The notes beneath the pieces were generated by a model. The model was not told where the DNA came from. It searched no databases and saw only the letters and a program-made list of their open reading frames with translations. A program made the translations under genes and the position numbers. Positions 1 to 63,407 of a stretch of DNA of 63,972 bases are shown here, in pieces; positions within the stretch are counted from its first letter, which is position 1, and each line of letters opens with the position of its first letter. The DNA comes from Lama guanicoe (taxonomy: Eukaryota). The stretch is from assembly GCA_013239625.1 (NCBI GenBank), contig MU055263.1:5799914-5863885 (forward strand), in the 5' to 3' direction.

Positions 1-600
1 GGGACTGGGCGGGGGCGGGGCGGGGGCCGCGCCGGGGCGGCGGCGGCGGAGGAGGGAGAGGGAGAGCGGCTGCGGCGGCTGCGGCGGCTGCGCCCGCTGT
101 CGACTTCGCAGCCGCCGCGGCCCGAGTGTTGCCGAGCTTCGGGACTGCGGGGCCGGGGACTCACCGCTCAGCGCTGGAAACAAAGCGCGGCTGCCGTCTC
201 CCGGGAGCGCGCCACGAGGCCGCCCGGCCGCCCCGCCGCGAGCGCCGGTGCGCGGGCAGCAGGGCCCGGCTGCACACCTCTCGCGGGCCGGGAGAGGGTC
301 GGGAGAGGGGCGTAGGACTGCCCAGGCGCACATGCGAGGGGCCCTGGAAGTGCGGTGTTTGCGTCGGCCGCCGCCTTCTCACGTGTGCATCCTGAGCGAC
401 TGGTTATTTACAGATGGGTTTGCAGCCTAAGGGAAGACTGGGAGCAGGCGAGAACTTAACTCTCACCCACAGAAATCTCTCTGTCTTTTCTTACACCGCG
501 TGCTTAGACAGGCTGCAGAGCCGCGTGGCAGTTTACAGTTGTACCAAACTAAGCGGCTTAAGTTAGGATTCTGGGCCTCCAGTAGCGTCCGTCTCTCTCA
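1..600 (-). promoter_or_regulatory. CpG-island promoter of a gene transcribed leftward out of the window (probably LRRC8B by synteny with the GBP cluster; KYAT3 not excluded)
   Basis: Very high GC and CpG density over 1-~400, tandem GC boxes (GGGCGG) at 7-40, E-box CACGTG at 380-385. Identity of the gene is inferred from mammalian GBP-cluster gene order only; no coding sequence is present. Confidence 0.8.
165..300 (-). other. Probable non-coding first exon of the leftward gene (5' end approximate)
   Basis: Plus-strand ACTCACCG at 159-166 reads CG|GTGAGT on the minus strand, a near-consensus U2 donor inside the CpG island. Confidence 0.5.
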
Positions 601-34059: not shown

Positions 34060-34660
34060 GCCAGCTTGCAGAACACTTTCTTAGACTTATCTAATCCTCG
34101 AGATGGCTTCAGGTGCAGGTGTTATAACTGAGATCTTACGGGAGAGGAAGTGACGTTTAGAGAGGTTAAGGTCCCCTTGGTGCTGGCAGAGTAGGGTCCT
34201 GGGGCATCGTGGTAAGAGCAGGGTGTCAGAGAGACTCAGAGACACTCAGGTTCCACCATCTTTGCCGTTTCCTAGCTCTGTGACCTTGAGCAGTTTCCTT
34301 GAAAACATCTGTGTCCGCTTCCTCATCTGCCTTGGGCTGCTGCCAGGACTGAGTGGGCACTGGGTATGGAGGTGTCTGACCCCTGAAAGGTGTGTGCTAG
34401 TTACACCATCCAACCTTTGGGGAGGAGAAGGGAGATGGCTCAGTGCTGCGGACTGCAGCGTTTCGTGTCAGACAGGACTGGCTCCAACCAGCACGTGCTG
34501 CTTGGACTTGCGTGTGTTACTTGAACTCTCTGGGTCTCTGTCTCCTCTGTTGTGAAATGTGTGTCGTAGTGTGACCTTGGGGAGCTGCGAGCACCGACCG
34601 ACGTGACAGAGGCGAAGTGCGGAGCACGGCACAGGCCCTCCCCGAGGCACTGGGTGTGCA
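34060..34660. mobile_element. Cluster of MIR fragments (the last is strongly GC-shifted)
   Basis: agaggttaag, ctagctctgtgaccttgagcagttt and ttcctcatctg are MIR motifs. Confidence 0.6.
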
Positions 34661-35406
34661 TCAGGGCTCCTCTCTCTGGCTCCCGGCCTGGCGCTGCTGT
34701 CGGACAGCGCCGGCTCCCTAGAGAGCACCGACGGGTGTGGTCCAGCCCGAAAGCGCTGTGACGGGCTTGCAGGGCTCTTCAAGGGTGAGGTCTGAGGCCG
34801 GAGGGGAGAACCCACTTACCCAGGTCACAGAGCTAATGGCAGAGGTGGACGTGGAGCCCAGTTCTGATTTGAGCTCCAGCAGTCTTTTCTTTTTCTTTTT
34901 CTTTTTCACAATGTTACAATAACCTCATGATCGCATTATTCGTGCCTCTCTTGCCTTGTGAAAGTGACTTTTATTAAGAATCATTAGTATGTGTAAATAG
35001 CATTGCTAAAGCAGTTGAACCAGACCTGCACTTCTCCACTTCACAAGCAGCCAGCTATAGGACTTCAAGCACAGAAAGCTTTCCTTTCATGTCGTGAGCT
35101 GTTCTCCGTAACAGAACCGCGGAGGTTACTTGGTCACTGTGCCTGGTGTTTAAAGCTGTGCTCCCTTGGAATCCAGTCGCACACTTTCAGCGTCTACTCA
35201 CTTGACTTCAAATTTGCTGTTGCTATTGCTCCAGAGACGTGTGTGTCCACTAGAAGACGTGTGAAAGAACCCAGCGCAGAGGCGCCAGGAAGCCCAGATT
35301 CTGGTTCCACGTTTGGCGCTAACTGGCTGTTAAACCTGGTTGGAAACGAATTTACTGCCTCTCTGGTGCCTCTGGAGATCCTGAAGTGAGTCTGGGATAT
35401 TTTCCA

Positions 35407-41649: not shown

Positions 41650-42530
41650 CTCTTGCGGGTGTCTGCAGAGGAGCAGCCGACGGTCAGGCGCCCACTAAGG
41701 AGCCACAGATGGGTTGCTCTCCTCTGCGGCAGCGGCCCGACGCTGAATGCGTCATCGCCACACGGAGACGCAGCTAGTCTTCCGCTGTTGGTAGCTGATG
41801 AGAAGTTCCCCCTCTTTTGTGTCCTAGTCCCAAGGCCTGGAGTCAAGGAAGAAAGCCAAGCATTCCACGATGTGTGGCGCTGTTCTCCGCGAAGAGTGGC
41901 CGCCCTCGGACGGGCAGCCGCAGCCCCCGCGCGGTGCCGAGGCGGGTCGGAACGGGCCTGCTCGGGCGTCAGGCCGACCTGCATTCCGGGTGCCAGGCAG
42001 TGACTGTGAGCTGCTTCTGCTTTTTTTTTCCCCTCCAGGATAGGGCATAAGACTTTAAGAAAACTTTTTCAAATAGAAGTCACACGTTCACTTGCACACT
42101 GGCAGAAGCAGACAGTGAGAGGAAGAGAGACGCCCCCGTGGCGCCAGCACAGAGCCGGCTGTCGGCGGCTTGCGTTGCATCGTCCTGTGTGCGAACGCGT
42201 CTTTGAAGAGCTGCAACCTATCAGAGGAGCGAGGAGGCCCGGGGCCCCCTCCTCGCACAGCACCGCGACTGCGAACGCGTTGCTCGGCCAGCTCGTCCGT
42301 CCCGCCCGCGGCGCGTCCGCCTGGCCGCGTCACCGCCTTCGCACTCCGCTCTCCCTCGTGAGGAGGGGGAGACTCAAGAGGCGTCCCCCGTGGCAGCTCC
42401 TCGTTGCCACGCAAACCTCAGCTCAGATACTGCCACCCCAGGGTCGCCTTCCCGCCCCTTCAGTCTAGGGACGCTCCTCTGTCATCTGTTGCTTCCTTCA
42501 TGCCATGTGTCAGTCCCGTCGGTAACGAAC
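41650..42530. promoter_or_regulatory. Orphan intergenic CpG island
   Basis: About 900 bp of high GC and CpG density with no recognisable coding exon; its right edge runs into an L2 remnant. Confidence 0.7.
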
Positions 42531-56127: not shown

Positions 56128-56317
56128 ATGGCATCTGGACCCAACATGATGGACCCCATTTGTCTGCTGGAAAATGATGATGAGCTGCTGTCAGTGAACA
56201 AAGAAGCTCTGCAGATTCTTGGTGAGATTTCTCAGCCAGTGGTGGTGGTGGCCATCGTAGGACTGTATCGTACGGGCAAATCCTACTTGATGAACCGTCT
56301 TGCAGGTCAGAACCGTG
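56128..56317 (+). CDS. GBP6: GBP6-like coding exon 1 (gene exon 2): [16 protein letters not shown]...[26 protein letters not shown]
   Basis: Acceptor ttctag| at 56113, Kozak gccATGG, P-loop GxxRxGKS, donor G|GTAAGT at 56318; 190 coding nt. Confidence 0.95.
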
Positions 56318-57115
56318 GTAAGTATTGTACTGGGTCAAGGGCCAATTGCTTGATTCTAGCTAATATCTCAGCTTCTTAATTTTCGTCCCTGGTCATGTGT
56401 AGGGAGGACCAAACTTCTCTTAATAAACCAACTTTCCACTTCTATTTCTCACTGCGAAATCACTATCTTAGTGTAATTTGTTATCATATTCTTTGTTTTA
56501 TTCCTGTAAAGCAAAATTTCTTCTGCTGATGCACACAATCCTACCTTATTTTACTTGCTTAAGCACTGGGCTCTTGCAATCATGTCTACTCTCTCTTGAA
56601 ATACATTTTGCTTTTTTATGGCATATTCTCATCAGCATATGAAGATGTTTGAATATCTACAGTCTTAAAAATCTTTCCTGGATGTCATATCCTACTGTGG
56701 CTAACACCTCTCCCCACTTTTAAAAAATAATTTTGTTTGGCAAAGAATATAATCTTGATTTCTTTTTTCCACTTTTTTCTCTTCCCATGTTTCTCTTCAG
56801 TCCACTTCTCTCTGGCTTTGAACCCGACCATTCTTTCAAAATACTCTTGTTATGGCTACCAGTGACCTCCATTTTGTTGGATTCATGGATTCCCCTTTGC
56901 CCCCGTGTGGAGCCCTTGCTTGGTATCCTTCTCACAGTTAATATTCCCTCCTCCTTGGAACAGATGACACACAAAGTAGGACATTCTTGAGGAAATGGAG
57001 AAGCACCATGCCGTATGCTGGGGTACTGACATTCCAACAGATCTGACTTTGTGGCCCCTTGGCTGCTTAGATTATCTGCTCTCACTGAGTGCTGCTTTCT
57101 CCCCTCTCCTCGCAG

Positions 57116-57246
57116 GCTTTCCTCTAGGCTCTACAGTGCAGTCTGAAACCAAGGGCATCTGGATGTGGTGTGTGCCTCACCCCTGCAAGCCAAATCATAC
57201 CCTGGTCCTTCTTCTGGATACTTAGAGCCTGGGGATTGTGTGAATG
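57116..57246 (+). CDS. GBP6: GBP6-like coding exon 2: [42 protein letters not shown]
   Basis: Acceptor cgcag| at 57115, donor GTAAAG at 57247; switch-I Thr region intact; extra Leu codon and two stops where DTEGLGDVEK is expected. Confidence 0.9.
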
Positions 57247-57260
57247 GTAAAGCAGAAAGT

Positions 57261-57438
57261 NNNNNNNNNNNNNNNNNNNNNNNNNNNNNNNNNNNNNNNN
57301 NNNNNNNNNNNNNNNNNNNNNNNNNNNNNNNNNNNNNNNNNNNNNNNNNNNNNNNNNNNNNNNNNNNNNNNNNNNNNNNNNNNNNNNNNNNNNNNNNNNN
57401 NNNNNNNNNNNNNNNNNNNNNNNNNNNNNNNNNNNNNN
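57261..57438. other. Assembly gap (178 N)
   Basis: N run. Confidence 1.
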
Positions 57439-58845: not shown

Positions 58846-59049
58846 NNNNNNNNNNNNNNNNNNNNNNNNNNNNNNNNNNNNNNNNNNNNNNNNNNNNNNN
58901 NNNNNNNNNNNNNNNNNNNNNNNNNNNNNNNNNNNNNNNNNNNNNNNNNNNNNNNNNNNNNNNNNNNNNNNNNNNNNNNNNNNNNNNNNNNNNNNNNNNN
59001 NNNNNNNNNNNNNNNNNNNNNNNNNNNNNNNNNNNNNNNNNNNNNNNNN
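58846..59049. other. Assembly gap (204 N) abutting extremely GC-rich sequence
   Basis: N run. Confidence 1.
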
Positions 59050-59379
59050 GGGCCTGCGAGGGGAGCGGCGCGCGCCGCCGAGGCGCCTGCCCGAGGCCCA
59101 GAGGGAGGCGCCGCCCGCGGAGAAGCGCGAGGTGGGGAAGACGCGCCTGCGCGATGTGGCCGTTTCCCCGGAGCCGGTGGGCCGCGCGGTGCGGTGGGCG
59201 TGTGCAGCCGGGTGGAGGGCAGGCCCGAGGTGATCGGCCACTACCCAGGCGAGCTCTCAGTCGCGGCAGGCCCGTGAAGCACGCCGGCCTGGCGTCGGGG
59301 CCACGCACTCCTCCCGCTTCACCCCCTCCGGTAGCCTGCGGGTCAATAAAGGCACCAACTTCTCTAAAAAAATTAAAAA
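59050..59379 (+). pseudogene. RPS15: Processed pseudogene of 40S ribosomal protein S15 (uS19), codons ~48-145, 3'UTR and poly(A); 5' part lost in the gap
   Basis: Frameshifted translation GLRGERRAPPRRLPEAQREAPPAEKREVGKTRLRDVAVSPEPVGRAV / VEGRPEVIGHYPGELSV / PVKH / [12 protein letters not shown] aligns to RPS15 [47 protein letters not shown]...VEIKPEMIGHYLGEFSI...[21 protein letters not shown]. Intronless; stop TAG 59332-59334, AATAAA 59345-59350, A-rich tail 59366-59379. Confidence 0.93.
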
Positions 59380-59536
59380 GTGCCCACACTCATCACTGAG
59401 TACCTAGTTACACAACAGGTACTGTACCAGTTTTTCTATATATGTTATTTTGCTTTATCCACTTGAGGAAAAAGAAAGCACCGTGAAGATTGAAATCCTT
59501 TTATATATGAAAAAATTGCAAACAGGAGAAATGTCT

Positions 59537-60115
59537 CAGCCGCCCATCTCTCTCCCTCCTTGGAGACGGCCCACATTCTGTCTATGGAGTGTGTACCTGT
59601 GAAGGAAAAGCCCAGCTGGGCTAACGAGCTAAGTCACAAATCTAAGTGTGATAAGTGTCAGTTTACTGATATAAGTTCTGCCGGGCTAACTCGTAAATCT
59701 GAAGTTTAGTGTCAGTTTACTGGGCTAACAAGCTAACTCGTAAATCCAAGCTCAACAAGTGTCAGTAACGTGATCTGTTCCGAATTGATAAGCTTCAGTG
59801 TACTGATTCCTTGTTTTTTTGTTGTTTGAGCCTTATTGGCTAATAGCCCATACTTGTAATTAACCCTATAAAACCTCATGTGCACGTCTTGGAGGTGATC
59901 AGAGCTTCAGAGCAGAAGCCCCTCTGAGCCCGTCGGCGTAATAAATCTAAGTACTCCAACCCTCCGAGTGGTGCTTGTTTCTTGGCTGGCCTGTCATTTC
60001 CGTAACATACCTACTTTTAATCTGAGCACCCAACCCCTACACCTCATAGCCTTTCTCTTGCCTTTCAATGTATCTCCCTGAATAAATCTACCTTTACTCA
60101 AAAATAAAAAAAAAA
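59537..60115 (+). mobile_element. Older LTR-like fragment ending in AATAAA plus poly(A), split by a younger solo LTR
   Basis: ctatggagtgtgtacc | tacttttaat...ctccctgAATAAAtctacctttactc followed by an A-tail at 60100-60115; MIR-like flanks. Confidence 0.55.
59598..60007 (+). mobile_element. ERV1-type solo LTR, 410 bp, with 4-bp TSD
   Basis: TG...CA termini flanked by TACC (59594-59597 and 60008-60011); U3 direct repeats (agtgtcagtttactg, gctaactcgtaaatc), reverse CCAAT 59835-59839, TATAAAA 59867-59873, AATAAA 59940-59945. Confidence 0.88.
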
Positions 60116-60290: not shown

Positions 60291-60400
60291 GGTGACCCTA
60301 AGAATGACTCATGGATCTTTGCCCTGGCCGTGCTTCTGTGCAGCAGCTTTGTCTACAACAACATGAACACCATCAACCATCAGGCTCTGGAGCAGCTGCA
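60291..60400 (+). CDS. GBP6: GBP6-like coding exon 3: GDPKNDSWIFALAVLLCSSFVYNNMNTINHQALEQL(H)
   Basis: Acceptor tttctag| at 60290; 110 nt; followed by a U12 donor. Confidence 0.95.
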
Positions 60401-60590
60401 GTATCCTTTCCTTCCAGGACCTGAACTGCCATGTTTCACTGCAATCATAGGAATGGAGACAGAGTCAGTCTCTCCTCCCCTGCCGTTTAGTTTCCCTGGG
60501 TGGAGCGAAAGAGGGTGTTTATAATACTTTTATATTAGTGAAGTGTGGGAATTGTTGGTAGTGAGTTTCTTTTCCTTAACCAAGTCCTAG
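60401..60590 (+). other. U12-type (minor spliceosome) GT-AG intron, 190 nt
   Basis: 5' site GTATCCTTT (60401-60409), branch site TTTCCTTAAC (60571-60580) 10 nt before the intron end (AG at 60589-60590), and no polypyrimidine tract. Confidence 0.93.
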
Positions 60591-60787
60591 TTATGTGACA
60601 GAGCTCACAGAACTCATCAGGGCGAAGTCCTCCCAAACACCTGATGGAGTAGAAGATTCCACAGAATTTGTGAGTTTCTTTCCAGACTTTATCTGGACTG
60701 TACGGGATTTCACCCTGGAGCTGAAGGTAGATGGTCAGCCTATCACAGAAGATGAGTACTTGGAGAATGCCCTGAAGCTGATTCCAG
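60591..60787 (+). CDS. GBP6: GBP6-like coding exon 4: [14 protein letters not shown]...[17 protein letters not shown]...[11 protein letters not shown]
   Basis: 197 nt, open frame, G4 motif TVRD (GBP4/6/7 type), donor at 60788. Confidence 0.95.
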
Positions 60788-62134
60788 GTATCAGAGCATG
60801 GCCTGGGCAGTGGACGGTCCAGTAGAGGGTGGGATCTGCTAAACACTGTTCCTCATCTCCGTGATTACATTTGCATTTGAGACTAAATCAAAGTCTGTGG
60901 AAATGGTGGCTGGAAAGTGGGTTGCAAAGATCTAGGGGCTACAGTTGAATTTTACTTAAGAAAAGTAAAGTGTAAAGAGAAATTACTCAAAACCAGTTTG
61001 TTTTTTTAATACATCTTTAAATTTAGCATCCAGATTTAAATGGGTGCTGAAGTATTCTCAAGACCAGACAGTGTGTTCCCCATTTTGGCTTTTGCTTTTC
61101 TCTGTTGGAGATAACAACTGACCAGCTAATTGTTAGACGTGAAGCTGCAGTGAAAAGTCTATCTGGTGAAAAAAATACATATTTCACATGTTATTCATCT
61201 CAAAGAGAGATACATGACTTTCTAATCCTGTATAATTATATCATCTAAAAAATGATTTTTTGTTCTAAATAAACCTGAAGAAGTGTCTGTCTTTTCAATC
61301 TATGCGTTTTCAATATTGCTGACAATTATTAGAACATTCGTTTTACCTTCCACATCATGGCTTTCTCCTAATTCCCACATATTTACCCATGATTTAATTA
61401 CAAGGTAATAAATTATTTTCACAGGTTACATTTACAAGGATGTGTGTCTATTGAAACCCTGAGAGAAATATCAGTTCTGATTTACTCATTCTCACTTTCA
61501 TGTTTCTGTTCATGCTTTCTCAAAGCATTTATTGAGAAATTGGCTGGCAGGAGAGGACCACTGTCAAATCAGATATAACCCTTTACTTCAAAGAGTTTAT
61601 AGATTAGTGGTGATATCTGAAAATTACACTGCAGGTACATTTACCCTTCAGAGGTCTTTGCTAAAAAATAGATAATACTACATCAATTATTTTTAGCATC
61701 AAAACAGTTTTCCTTAAATAATGAGGGTGTCATTCCTAATATTCCAATTACCGTCAATGATCCCTTGTTTGTAGCTCCTCTTTTTGGTTCCACAGCTCAA
61801 TTCCTACATGAGGTCGAGTTGAGCAGAAAGTTTCATTTGACCTTTCATCCTTTTAGCTGCTAGTTAAGCGGACACCTGATAGACAACCATGGTACTGTGT
61901 GCAGGTCTGGAGAGAACAGCCATAGGTCTCCTTTACTGGATCAGATGTCTCCCTAAATTCCTCTGCAGTTATATCATTGGTATAAGTTTGATGTGCAAAG
62001 AAGTATTGAATGTCTATGTTAAAGGGGTTCTATGCATAGACGATGGCAAAGACACACAAATCCCCACCGGGAGCACCTGTAGCCCCCTCGCCTCAGGACT
62101 CTCCACGCTCTAATCCTGTGTTTCTGTCCCTCAG

Positions 62135-63126: not shown

Positions 63127-63407
63127 GGCTGAGGACTCTGGTTGTGACCTACGTGGATACCATCAATAGCGGAGCAGTACCTTGTTTGGAGAACGCAGTG
63201 ACAACTCTGGCCCAGCTGGAGAACTCAGCTGCCGTGCAGAAGGCAGCTGACCACTACAGCAAGCAGATGGCCCAGCGAGTGAGCTTCCCCACAGACACAC
63301 TGCAGGAGCTGCTGGAGGCGCACGCCGCCTGCGAGAGGGAAGCCACTGCAGTCTTCATGGAGCACTCCTTCAAGGATGACAAGCAGGAGTTCCAGAAGAA
63401 TCTTGTG
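63127..63407 (+). CDS. GBP6: GBP6-like coding exon 6: RLRTLVVTYVDTINSGAVPCLENAVTTLAQLENSAAVQKAADHY...FKDDKQEFQKNLV
   Basis: Acceptor cttcag| at 63126, donor GTAATC at 63408, 281 nt; start of the helical domain. Later exons are outside the window. Confidence 0.95.

What the first reader, a model, noticed from the sequence alone, without database searches (positions are those of the whole stretch)
59050..59379. RPS15 retrocopy that evolved 'backwards': about 40 A/T->G/C substitutions and no clear reverse change
Seen: RPS15 protein is essentially invariant in mammals, so first and second codon positions can be polarised without the parent gene. A hand alignment of codons 48-145 gives about 40 weak-to-strong changes (about 24 A->G, 9 T->C, 4 A->C, 3 T->G; e.g. 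ATG->GCG twice, ATG->CCG, CTG->CCG, AAG->CGG), 2 G<->C changes and no unambiguous G/C->A/T change. CpGs were gained, not lost. Frameshifts and a 15-nt deletion show it is not under coding selection. Established: processed pseudogenes normally drift toward AT through methyl-CpG decay, and bias across all four weak-to-strong classes is the signature of GC-biased gene conversion at recombination hotspots. Inference: this CpG-rich insert stayed unmethylated in the germline and acted as a long-lived, possibly PRDM9-independent and self-reinforcing hotspot planted inside an immune gene of a duplication-prone cluster.
Basis: partly seen in the sequence, partly recalled or inferred. Interest (0 to 1): 0.88.

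Follow-up and report, generated by a model that had tools for sequence, protein, structure and literature searches.

The report
GC-enriched dead RPS15 copy in GBP intron
A dead, reverse-transcribed copy of the ribosomal protein gene RPS15, lying in an intron of an interferon-induced GBP gene, has changed about 40 A/T letters to G/C and none demonstrably the other way, which is what a long-lived local recombination hotspot with GC-biased repair would produce; the mechanism is known, but this is an unusually clean case of it.

Summary
59051-59334 is RPS15 codons 48-145 plus stop, followed by a 3'UTR with AATAAA and an A-tail. The 5' part is hidden by a 204-N run.

At codon positions fixed by the invariant protein:
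- 38 of 90 A/T sites became G/C: 24 A>G, 9 T>C, 3 A>C, 2 T>G.
- 0 of 74 G/C sites became A/T (p=1.6e-12).
- CpGs rose from 22 to 40, and no ancestral CpG was lost to decay.

The bases are real. Contigs from independent DNA runs of two organisms match them. A more distant relative carries the same copy with most of the shift.

Polarising against that relative shows 8-9 further A/T>G/C changes in the window's lineage and 3-5 in the other. The process therefore acts on DNA, is old, and continued after the split. RNA editing and assembly error are excluded.

The best reading (about 0.6) is GC-biased gene conversion at a CpG-island-like, probably unmethylated insert. This resembles dog GC peaks and the PRDM9-independent hotspots of many placentals. 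Methylation, recombination and PRDM9 status were not testable, and the parent cDNA could not be fetched.

The scan's first readers noted similar AT>GC skews elsewhere in this genome; those notes are unchecked.

It is a new member of a known kind, of moderate interest.

The parts
58846..59049 (.). Run of 204 N directly upstream. It presumably hides the 5' part of the retrocopy (codons 1-47, 5'UTR, 5' junction). Not read and not filled.
   Evidence: (N runs). In one search an X1 contig runs 256 letters beyond 59050. Its letters were neither shown nor sought.
59051..59334 (+). RPS15 (uS19) coding remnant: codons 48-145 plus TAG stop. It carries 38-40 W>S changes and no polarisable S>W change.
59192..59196 (+). 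5-nt insertion, a tandem duplication of CGGTG, causing a frameshift. The related copy in run X15 shows no gap here, so it is shared.
   Evidence: no gap reported there; X15 differs only at 59192, C/T.
59202..59203 (+). Site of a 15-nt deletion (five codons within 97-103). It lies between two TGCAGC repeats that W>S changes themselves created. It is specific to the window's lineage; the X15 copy keeps the 15 letters.
   Evidence: table 4 (15 letters put in behind 59202 in X15).
59265..59322 (+). Three single-base deletions: T of codon 123 before 59266, one G of codon 129 before 59283, and T of codon 142 between 59321 and 59322.
59335..59365 (+). 3'UTR remnant with polyadenylation signal AATAAA at 59345-59350. 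GC is about 0.5.
59366..59379 (+). A-rich tail (A7 TT A5). Two of its A are G in the X15 copy (59366, 59377).
56182..56322 (+). Host gene: GBP exon encoding the P-loop ([12 protein letters not shown]).
   Evidence: Pfam GBP N-terminal domain, E=1.3e-17; motif search.
57100..57260 (+). Host gene: next GBP exon ([12 protein letters not shown]...LLLD), approximate limits. It is cut off by the N run 57261-57438.
   Evidence: motif at 57133-57144 in an open frame.
60330..60800 (+). Host gene: two further GBP-like exons, about 60330-60410 and 60595-60800. The retrocopy therefore lies in the intron between about 57.26 and 60.33 kb.
   Evidence: ORF translations, recognised by eye as GBP GTPase-domain sequence. 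Not tested against a profile.
63147..63407 (+). Host gene: GBP C-terminal helical-domain exon.
   Evidence: Pfam GBP_C, E=1.2e-46.

Best explanation
An RPS15 mRNA was reverse-transcribed and inserted, in sense orientation, into an intron of a GBP gene. This happened before the window's organism split from the organism of run X15.

The insert arrived already GC- and CpG-rich: about 63% GC, with 22 CpG in the 280 nt I could read. Inference: because of that density it behaved like an orphan CpG island and stayed unmethylated in the germline. Its CpGs therefore did not decay, and its open, H3K4me3-type chromatin drew meiotic double-strand breaks (a 'default', PRDM9-independent type of hotspot).

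Repair of heteroduplex DNA at such breaks favours G/C over A/T alleles. This is GC-biased gene conversion. New A/T>G/C mutations of all four classes were fixed about eight times faster than flank changes, and G/C>A/T mutations were eliminated. Each fixation raises CpG density, so the state can sustain itself.

Shown here: the identity of the insert, the direction and size of the bias, its strand symmetry, its persistence in two lineages, retention of CpGs, and the position in the GBP intron.

Inferred, not shown: hypomethylation, recombination and PRDM9 independence.
For: - W>S 38 of 90 sites against S>W 0 of 74 (p=1.6e-12). All four W>S classes are present.
- No significant strand asymmetry (p=0.15). 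No excess at CpG-creating contexts (15/40 vs 18/62, p=0.39). The bias is therefore general W>S, not CpG-specific.
- CpGs rose from 22 to 40. The only ancestral CpG lost is a private G>C at 59091.
- After the split from the X15 organism, the window's lineage gained 8-9 W>S, 2 S<>S and 0 S>W changes. The X15 lineage gained 3 W>S in the coding part plus 2 A>G in the A-tail.
- The post-split W>S rate is 0.133 per W site, against 0.016 per site per lineage in the 213-nt unique 3' flank. That is about 8-fold (CI 3-23). GC* is at least 0.92.
- The density of W>S changes falls toward the 3' end (0.56 to 0.17 per W site, Mann-Whitney p=0.029). The UTR, tail and flank have ordinary composition, as expected for short conversion tracts centred further 5'.
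- Precedent in dogs: CpG islands show suppressed CpG decay, raised W>S and raised GC* (PMC4350167).
- Precedent in placentals: 63% of 52 species show recombination activity at conserved hypomethylated loci despite an intact PRDM9 (PMC11161765, section 8).
Against: - There is no direct measure of methylation, double-strand breaks, crossovers or allele frequencies.
- The GC peak is very narrow and stops near the end of the insert, whereas published dog GC peaks are about 1 kb wide (PMC4053742). That would also fit a property confined to the insert, such as a local mutational bias.
- The 5' side cannot be seen because of the N run.
- Third codon positions are unpolarised, so up to six hidden S>W changes are possible.
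- The flank rate rests on only 7 differences.
- Run X15 shows the stretch is transcribed through, probably as host pre-mRNA. Gene-body transcription usually promotes methylation rather than preventing it.
Confidence: 0.6

Rival explanations
1. A local mutational bias rather than a fixation bias. The CpG-dense, G-skewed insert is unmethylated, so there is no CpG decay. It also suffers a W>S-biased mutation process tied to its chromatin or transcription, for example R-loops, polymerase pausing or error-prone repair synthesis. Meiotic gene conversion is not the cause.
For: - The effect is confined to the insert and its boundary is sharp.
- The region has positive GC skew, +0.09 to +0.20.
- It is transcribed through: a 2661-nt RNA-library contig at depth 24 covers it.
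- Hypermutation peaks at transcription start sites and Pol II pause sites are documented in humans (PMC13712754).
Against: - As I know it, no germline mutational process gives a GC* above 0.9. Mammalian germline mutation spectra are AT-biased, even in unmethylated DNA.
- The absence of any S>W change at 74 sites needs removal of such mutations, not just extra W>S mutations.
- Strand symmetry argues against a transcription-strand-specific process.
Confidence: 0.2
2. Selection. The insert was recruited as a regulatory CpG island, such as an intronic promoter or enhancer of the GBP gene or of a non-coding RNA. Higher GC/CpG content was favoured.
For: - It meets the sequence definition of a CpG island.
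- It has been kept for a long time in two lineages.
- Many retrocopy promoters lie in orphan CpG islands (PMC4772013).
- Another first-reader note in this genome proposes an RPSA retrocopy turned CpG island (s1-860872, unchecked).
Against: - W>S changes that create no CpG are as frequent as those that do (p=0.39).
- Indels, including a lineage-specific 15-nt loss, are tolerated.
- No conserved motif block stands out. Divergence between the two lineages is higher inside the insert (20/330) than in the flank (7/213). That is the opposite of constraint.
Confidence: 0.1
3. The shift arose before integration. The template RNA was hyper-edited (ADAR A-to-I), or copied by an error-prone reverse transcriptase, or the source was an already shifted RPS15 copy.
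For: A>G is the largest class, 24 of 38. The parent cDNA of this species could not be obtained, so the source sequence was not seen directly.
Against: - Per site, T>C is nearly as common as A>G (9/33 vs 24/57). Transversions to G/C also occur.
- 8-9 further W>S changes arose in the window's lineage and 3-5 in the X15 lineage after the copies separated. The process therefore acts on the integrated DNA.
- Short additional contigs in the DNA runs carry the canonical A/T at 59210, 59230 and 59254. Other RPS15-derived sequence in these genomes is thus not shifted there.
Confidence: 0.04
4. Assembly or sequencing artefact next to a gap in a GC-rich stretch.
For: The stretch abuts a 204-N run. One base (59091) disagrees with the other data sets.
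Against: Contigs from three separate runs and studies reproduce the sequence: X1 with 2 differences in 540 nt, X2 with 1 in 497 nt, and X15 as a diverged relative with the same shift.
Confidence: 0.02

Closest known systems
GC peaks / CpG-island recombination hotspots of canids (Axelsson 2012; Berglund 2014, PMC4350167; PMC4053742)
   Same: A short non-promoter stretch with at least 1.5-fold GC over background (0.76 vs 0.42 here). CpG decay is suppressed, W>S substitution is raised, GC* is very high, and the state is stable over species splits. The proposed loop is the same: unmethylated DNA, then breaks, then gBGC, then more CpG.
   Different: Canids lack PRDM9, whereas PRDM9 status here is unknown. 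Dog peaks are about 1 kb, whereas this one is visible over about 300 nt (the 5' side is masked). Here the seed is a dated insert with a known starting sequence.
PRDM9-independent hotspots at conserved hypomethylated loci in placental mammals (Joseph et al. 2024, PMC11161765)
   Same: Past recombination is inferred from equilibrium GC (GC*). Activity coexists with PRDM9 in most species and evolves slowly together with hypomethylation.
   Different: Those loci are defined by orthology to mouse Prdm9-/- DSB sites, mostly promoters. This locus is a lineage-restricted insert and was not tested for such orthology. In this paper's main text I found no mention of camelids; the species figure and datasets were not checked.
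Fxy/Mid1 in the Mus musculus pseudoautosomal region (classic gBGC case; from my own knowledge, Fxy is mentioned in PMC2631073 and PMC12290510)
   Same: A sequence of known ancestry acquires dozens of W>S changes, many altering amino acids, with almost no reverse changes.
   Different: Fxy is a functional gene moved into a chromosomal region of extreme recombination. Here a dead retrocopy seems to have brought the hotspot property with it.
Ordinary ribosomal-protein processed pseudogenes
   Same: Intronless, truncated and frameshifted, with AATAAA plus an A-tail, and lying in an intron.
   Different: By established knowledge, ordinary ones lose CpGs and drift toward AT. This one kept every ancestral CpG and gained 18.
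Orphan CpG islands used as retrocopy promoters (Carelli et al. 2016, PMC4772013)
   Same: A CpG island coinciding with a retrocopy.
   Different: In that work the islands drive expressed retrocopies and mostly lie upstream. Here the island is the decayed coding body itself, and no transcript start was shown.

Membership tests
Processed pseudogene (retrocopy) of RPS15/uS19 | Sequence homology to the RPS15 coding region | tested here: met
   PDB phmmer E=7e-8 for residues 48-93. The later pieces are colinear in shifted frames.
Processed pseudogene (retrocopy) of RPS15/uS19 | No intron at a parental exon junction | tested here: met
   Several genomic gene calls (P0001, P0020, P0025, P0037, P0039) read into an intron right after K108. 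The window runs straight from codon 108 to 109 (59221-59226).
Processed pseudogene (retrocopy) of RPS15/uS19 | Polyadenylation signal and A-tail at the 3' end | tested here: met
   AATAAA at 59345-59350 and an A-rich tail at 59366-59379.
Processed pseudogene (retrocopy) of RPS15/uS19 | Target-site duplication flanking the insert | not testable with these tools
   The 5' junction lies in or beyond the N run 58846-59049, which must not be filled.
Processed pseudogene (retrocopy) of RPS15/uS19 | Disabled reading frame | tested here: met
   A 5-nt insertion, a 15-nt deletion and three 1-nt deletions. There are in-frame stops in every frame.
gBGC tract (W>S-biased clustered substitutions) | Excess of W>S over S>W in all four classes, both strands alike | tested here: met
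   38 vs 0, with A>G 24, T>C 9, A>C 3, T>G 2. A vs T sites p=0.15.
gBGC tract (W>S-biased clustered substitutions) | Local effect decaying with distance from a centre | tested here: inconclusive
   There is a gradient within the insert (p=0.029), and the 3' flank is ordinary. The 5' side is masked.
gBGC tract (W>S-biased clustered substitutions) | Fixation bias: derived W>S alleles at higher frequency than S>W | not testable with these tools
   Only one read-laying run was available and it returned contigs, not population frequencies.
gBGC tract (W>S-biased clustered substitutions) | Coincidence with high meiotic recombination | not testable with these tools
   No recombination map, DMC1 data or H3K4me3 data are available here.
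CpG island | At least 200 nt with GC >0.5 and CpG o/e >0.6 | tested here: met
   GC 0.76-0.81 and o/e 1.03-1.12 over 59050-59300.
CpG island | Unmethylated in the germline | not testable with these tools
   Indirect support only: all 22 ancestral CpGs are kept apart from one private G>C.
PRDM9-independent ('default') recombination hotspot | Stable position across species | tested here: inconclusive
   W>S changes accrued in both lineages after their split. This is a proxy, not a measured hotspot.
PRDM9-independent ('default') recombination hotspot | Break formation independent of PRDM9 binding | not tested
   The species is not identified (coded names), and PRDM9 was not examined.
ADAR-hyperedited retrocopy | Changes are A>G on the sense strand only and predate integration | tested here: not met
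   There are 9 T>C changes and 5 transversions. Lineage-specific W>S changes arose after integration.

The most novel reading that the evidence does not exclude
A GC/CpG-rich mRNA copy, merely by landing in the genome, founded its own recombination hotspot. That hotspot has lasted through at least one speciation and keeps feeding itself by gBGC. If so, retrocopies of CpG-dense housekeeping mRNAs would be a source of new, stable, PRDM9-independent hotspots. In this case the hotspot lies inside an interferon-induced GBP gene, where extra breaks could promote rearrangement or allelic exchange. Because the starting sequence is known, such inserts would be natural calibrated probes of gBGC strength.
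Probability: 0.35. Interest if true: 0.65.

Novelty: new member of a known kind. Interest (0 to 1): 0.5.

Why it matters
Dead retrocopies normally serve as the textbook neutral yardstick that drifts toward AT. This one went the other way. Its starting sequence is fixed by an invariant protein, so direction, rate and equilibrium GC can be read without a model.

It gives a clean single-locus measurement:
- GC* is at least 0.92.
- The W>S rate is about 8 times the flank rate.
- No CpG decayed.

That is the force thought to build GC peaks and orphan CpG islands in mammals.

If methylation and recombination data confirm the inference, CpG density alone would be shown to seed a durable hotspot in a species that may well have PRDM9. 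A genome-wide test would follow: which retrocopies cross the CpG threshold and take off.

It also warns against using GC-rich retrocopies as neutral references, and against reading their fast change as selection.

Tried and rejected
Parent cDNA (not obtained):
- The search of protein representatives with the 47-residue piece gave only a partial RPS15 gene call (P0001) and an unrelated repeat protein.
- The one raw-read RNA run laid nothing (X24).
- The species' own RPS15 mRNA was therefore not obtained, and third codon positions stay unpolarised.

Blank searches:
- Rfam: no family anywhere in the window.
- Tandem repeats: only a weak 24-nt x 2.2 array at 59079-59132 with 73% matches, a by-product of the GC-rich low complexity.
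- Host gene: four Pfam rounds on long ORFs were blank before a motif search and one more round located the GBP exons.
- ORFs in the CpG island at 41.5-42.5 kb: no Pfam or PDB match, so there is no sign that it is another retrocopy.

Readings rejected:
- Assembly artefact: three independent data sets agree.
- ADAR or pre-integration editing: the change is strand-symmetric and continued after the split.
- X15 being a paralogue within the same genome: its variant letters have depth 0 in the DNA runs X1 and X2, and the window-type letters are absent from X15.
- CpG-specific selection: no context excess.

Full report
**What is there**

The stretch 59050-59379 follows directly on a run of 204 N (58846-59049). 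From 59051 it translates into 47 residues that match mammalian ribosomal protein S15 (uS19) residues 48-93 (PDB sequence search, E=7e-8). The remainder of the protein follows in shifted frames.

I took the canonical mammalian protein from the protein search (P0053, a cluster of 412 member sequences). I then built a codon map:
- codons 48-94 at 59051-59191
- a 5-nt tandem duplication, CGGTG, at 59192-59196
- codons 95-98
- a 15-nt deletion behind 59202
- codons 104-122
- single-base deletions in codons 123, 129 and 142
- stop codon TAG at 59332-59334
- a 3'UTR with AATAAA at 59345-59350
- an A-rich tail at 59366-59379

Several genomic gene calls for RPS15 read into an intron right after K108. 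The window runs straight across that junction. It is therefore a processed pseudogene whose 5' part and 5' junction are hidden by the N run. I did not try to fill that run.

At codon positions where every synonymous codon has the same base:
- 38 of 90 A/T sites are now G/C: A>G 24, T>C 9, A>C 3, T>G 2.
- None of 74 G/C sites is now A/T.
- Two sites are G<>C.
- Fisher p=1.6e-12.

CpG dinucleotides rose from 22 to 40 and GC from 0.63 to 0.77. The only ancestral CpG lost is through G>C at 59091, and the other data sets read G there. The stretch has GC 0.76-0.81 and CpG o/e 1.03-1.12, against window means of 0.43 and 0.36.

There is one limit. Third positions cannot be polarised from the protein. 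Six codons end in A/T, so up to six S>W changes could be hidden. Even then the equilibrium GC is at least 0.93, and it is at least 0.92 from the strict sites.

**The bases are real and the state is old**

In one search:
- A 796-nt contig from a DNA run of organism A (X1, depth 29) covers 59050-59589 with two differences.
- A contig from organism B in another study (X2) covers 59093-59589 with one difference.
- A 2661-nt contig from an RNA library of a third source (X15) covers 59050-59592 colinearly, unique 3' flank included. It has 29 differences and 15 extra letters behind 59202.

The X15 variant letters have zero depth in X1 and X2, and the window's letters are absent from X15. X15 is therefore the same insertion in another taxon, not a paralogue.

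It shares the 5-nt duplication and, as far as the table shows, about 30 of the 38 W>S changes. It keeps the 15 letters the window lacks. The window's deletion lies between two TGCAGC repeats that W>S changes had themselves created.

**The process went on after the split**

I polarised the window/X15 differences with the protein-determined ancestral base.
- Window lineage: 8 strict W>S changes (7 A>G, 1 T>C), one A>C at codon 92, two S<>S changes and no S>W.
- X15 lineage: T>G, A>G and T>C in the coding part, plus two A>G in the A-tail, and at most two third-position S>W changes.

The post-split W>S rate in the window's lineage is 0.133 per A/T site. The 213-nt unique flank shows 0.016 changes per site per lineage. 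That is about 8-fold, with a CI of 3-23. The bias therefore acts on the integrated DNA, in both lineages, over a long time.

**What kind of bias**

- It is strand-symmetric: A sites 28/62 against T sites 12/40, p=0.15.
- It is not concentrated at CpG-creating contexts: 15/40 against 18/62 transitions, p=0.39.
- It declines toward the 3' end of the insert. The share of A/T sites changed per 50-nt bin is 0.56, 0.31, 0.56, 0.36, 0.33, 0.17 (Mann-Whitney p=0.029).
- The UTR (GC 0.5), the tail and the flank (GC about 0.41) look ordinary.

This pattern rules out ADAR-type editing of the template and assembly error. It speaks against selection for CpGs as such.

It is the pattern of GC-biased gene conversion:
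- all four W>S classes are present;
- S>W changes are removed;
- CpGs are spared;
- the extent is local.

**Mechanism proposed**

The insert arrived with CpG-island-like density. It probably escaped germline methylation, acquired open chromatin, and drew meiotic breaks. GC-biased repair then fixed W>S alleles and raised CpG density further.

Every step after 'arrived CpG-dense' is inference. It is backed by precedent. In dogs, CpG islands show 6- to 16-fold lower CpG decay, raised W>S and raised GC* (PMC4350167), and GC peaks are at least 1.5-fold over background (PMC4053742). Among 52 placentals, 63% show recombination activity at conserved hypomethylated loci despite an intact PRDM9 (PMC11161765, section 8).

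I give this 0.6. The rivals are:
- A purely mutational W>S bias of an unmethylated, transcribed, G-skewed insert, 0.2. The sharp boundary favours it. The total lack of S>W changes and the strand symmetry argue against it.
- Selection for a regulatory CpG island, 0.1. Against it, divergence inside the insert exceeds that of the flank, and indels are tolerated.

**Surroundings**

The host is a guanylate-binding protein (GBP) gene on the + strand:
- P-loop exon at about 56182-56322 (Pfam GBP, E=1.3e-17)
- an exon with [12 protein letters not shown] at about 57.1-57.26 kb, cut by a second N run (57261-57438)
- GBP-like exons at about 60.33-60.41 and 60.6-60.8 kb, recognised by eye
- a GBP_C exon at 63147-63407 (E=1.2e-46)

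The retrocopy lies in the intron between 57.26 and 60.33 kb, in the same orientation.

Only one GBP gene is visible in the window, so the 'duplication-prone cluster' is not shown here. The X15 contig (depth 24 in a 780-Mb RNA library, reaching about 2.1 kb upstream of 59050) indicates that the stretch is transcribed through, most simply as host pre-mRNA.

**Limits**

- The single read-laying run is spent, and the raw-read RNA run laid nothing.
- The species' own RPS15 mRNA, other retrocopies, methylation, recombination and allele frequencies were therefore out of reach.
- Organism names are coded, so 'camelid' and PRDM9 status are untested.

**Verdict**

It corresponds to a known phenomenon, so this is a new and unusually clean member of a known kind rather than a new mechanism.

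First-reader notes elsewhere in this genome report similar AT>GC skews and an RPSA retrocopy turned CpG island. They are unchecked. They suggest that a genome-wide survey would be worthwhile.

Noticed in passing
window 57261-57438: A second N run (178 N) cuts off the 3' part of a conserved GBP exon (…[22 protein letters not shown]|N…). Both N runs in this window begin inside conserved coding-derived sequence.
   Followed up: no
window 34470-34860: A second, milder GC peak (GC 0.61-0.69, CpG o/e 0.64-0.69), which a first-reader note (s1-861190) calls a MIR overwritten by W>S changes. I only confirmed the composition.
   Followed up: partly
window 1-400 and 41800-42500: Two full CpG islands (GC 0.67-0.80, CpG o/e 0.85-1.07). 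Their ORFs have no Pfam or PDB protein match. They may be promoters or first exons of unidentified transcripts.
   Followed up: partly
window 59560-60010: A very high-copy repeat right after the retrocopy's unique flank: summed contig depth 1e5-3.6e5 in the DNA runs. It has internal ~100-nt direct repeats (joints 'goes back 83-101') and a common ~414-nt skipping form. Probably a SINE or other interspersed repeat family of this lineage.
   Followed up: no
window 59050-59592 (run X15): An RNA-library contig of 2661 nt (depth 24) from a 'reproductive system metagenome' covers the retrocopy, its flank and about 2.1 kb upstream. The GBP intron, or a transcript through it, is therefore well represented in RNA of a related animal.
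   Followed up: partly
protein P0001; window codon 51 at 59060-59062: P0001, a partial genomic RPS15 gene call from an ENA contig, has Gly instead of Arg at residue 51. The window's codon 51 is also GGG.
   Followed up: no
window 59204-59260 and about 59290-59320 (runs X1, X2): Short extra contigs of roughly single-copy depth lie on parts of the retrocopy. They carry canonical A/T (or C) states at 59210, 59230, 59254 and 59305. They probably come from another, unshifted RPS15-derived sequence in these genomes.
   Followed up: partly
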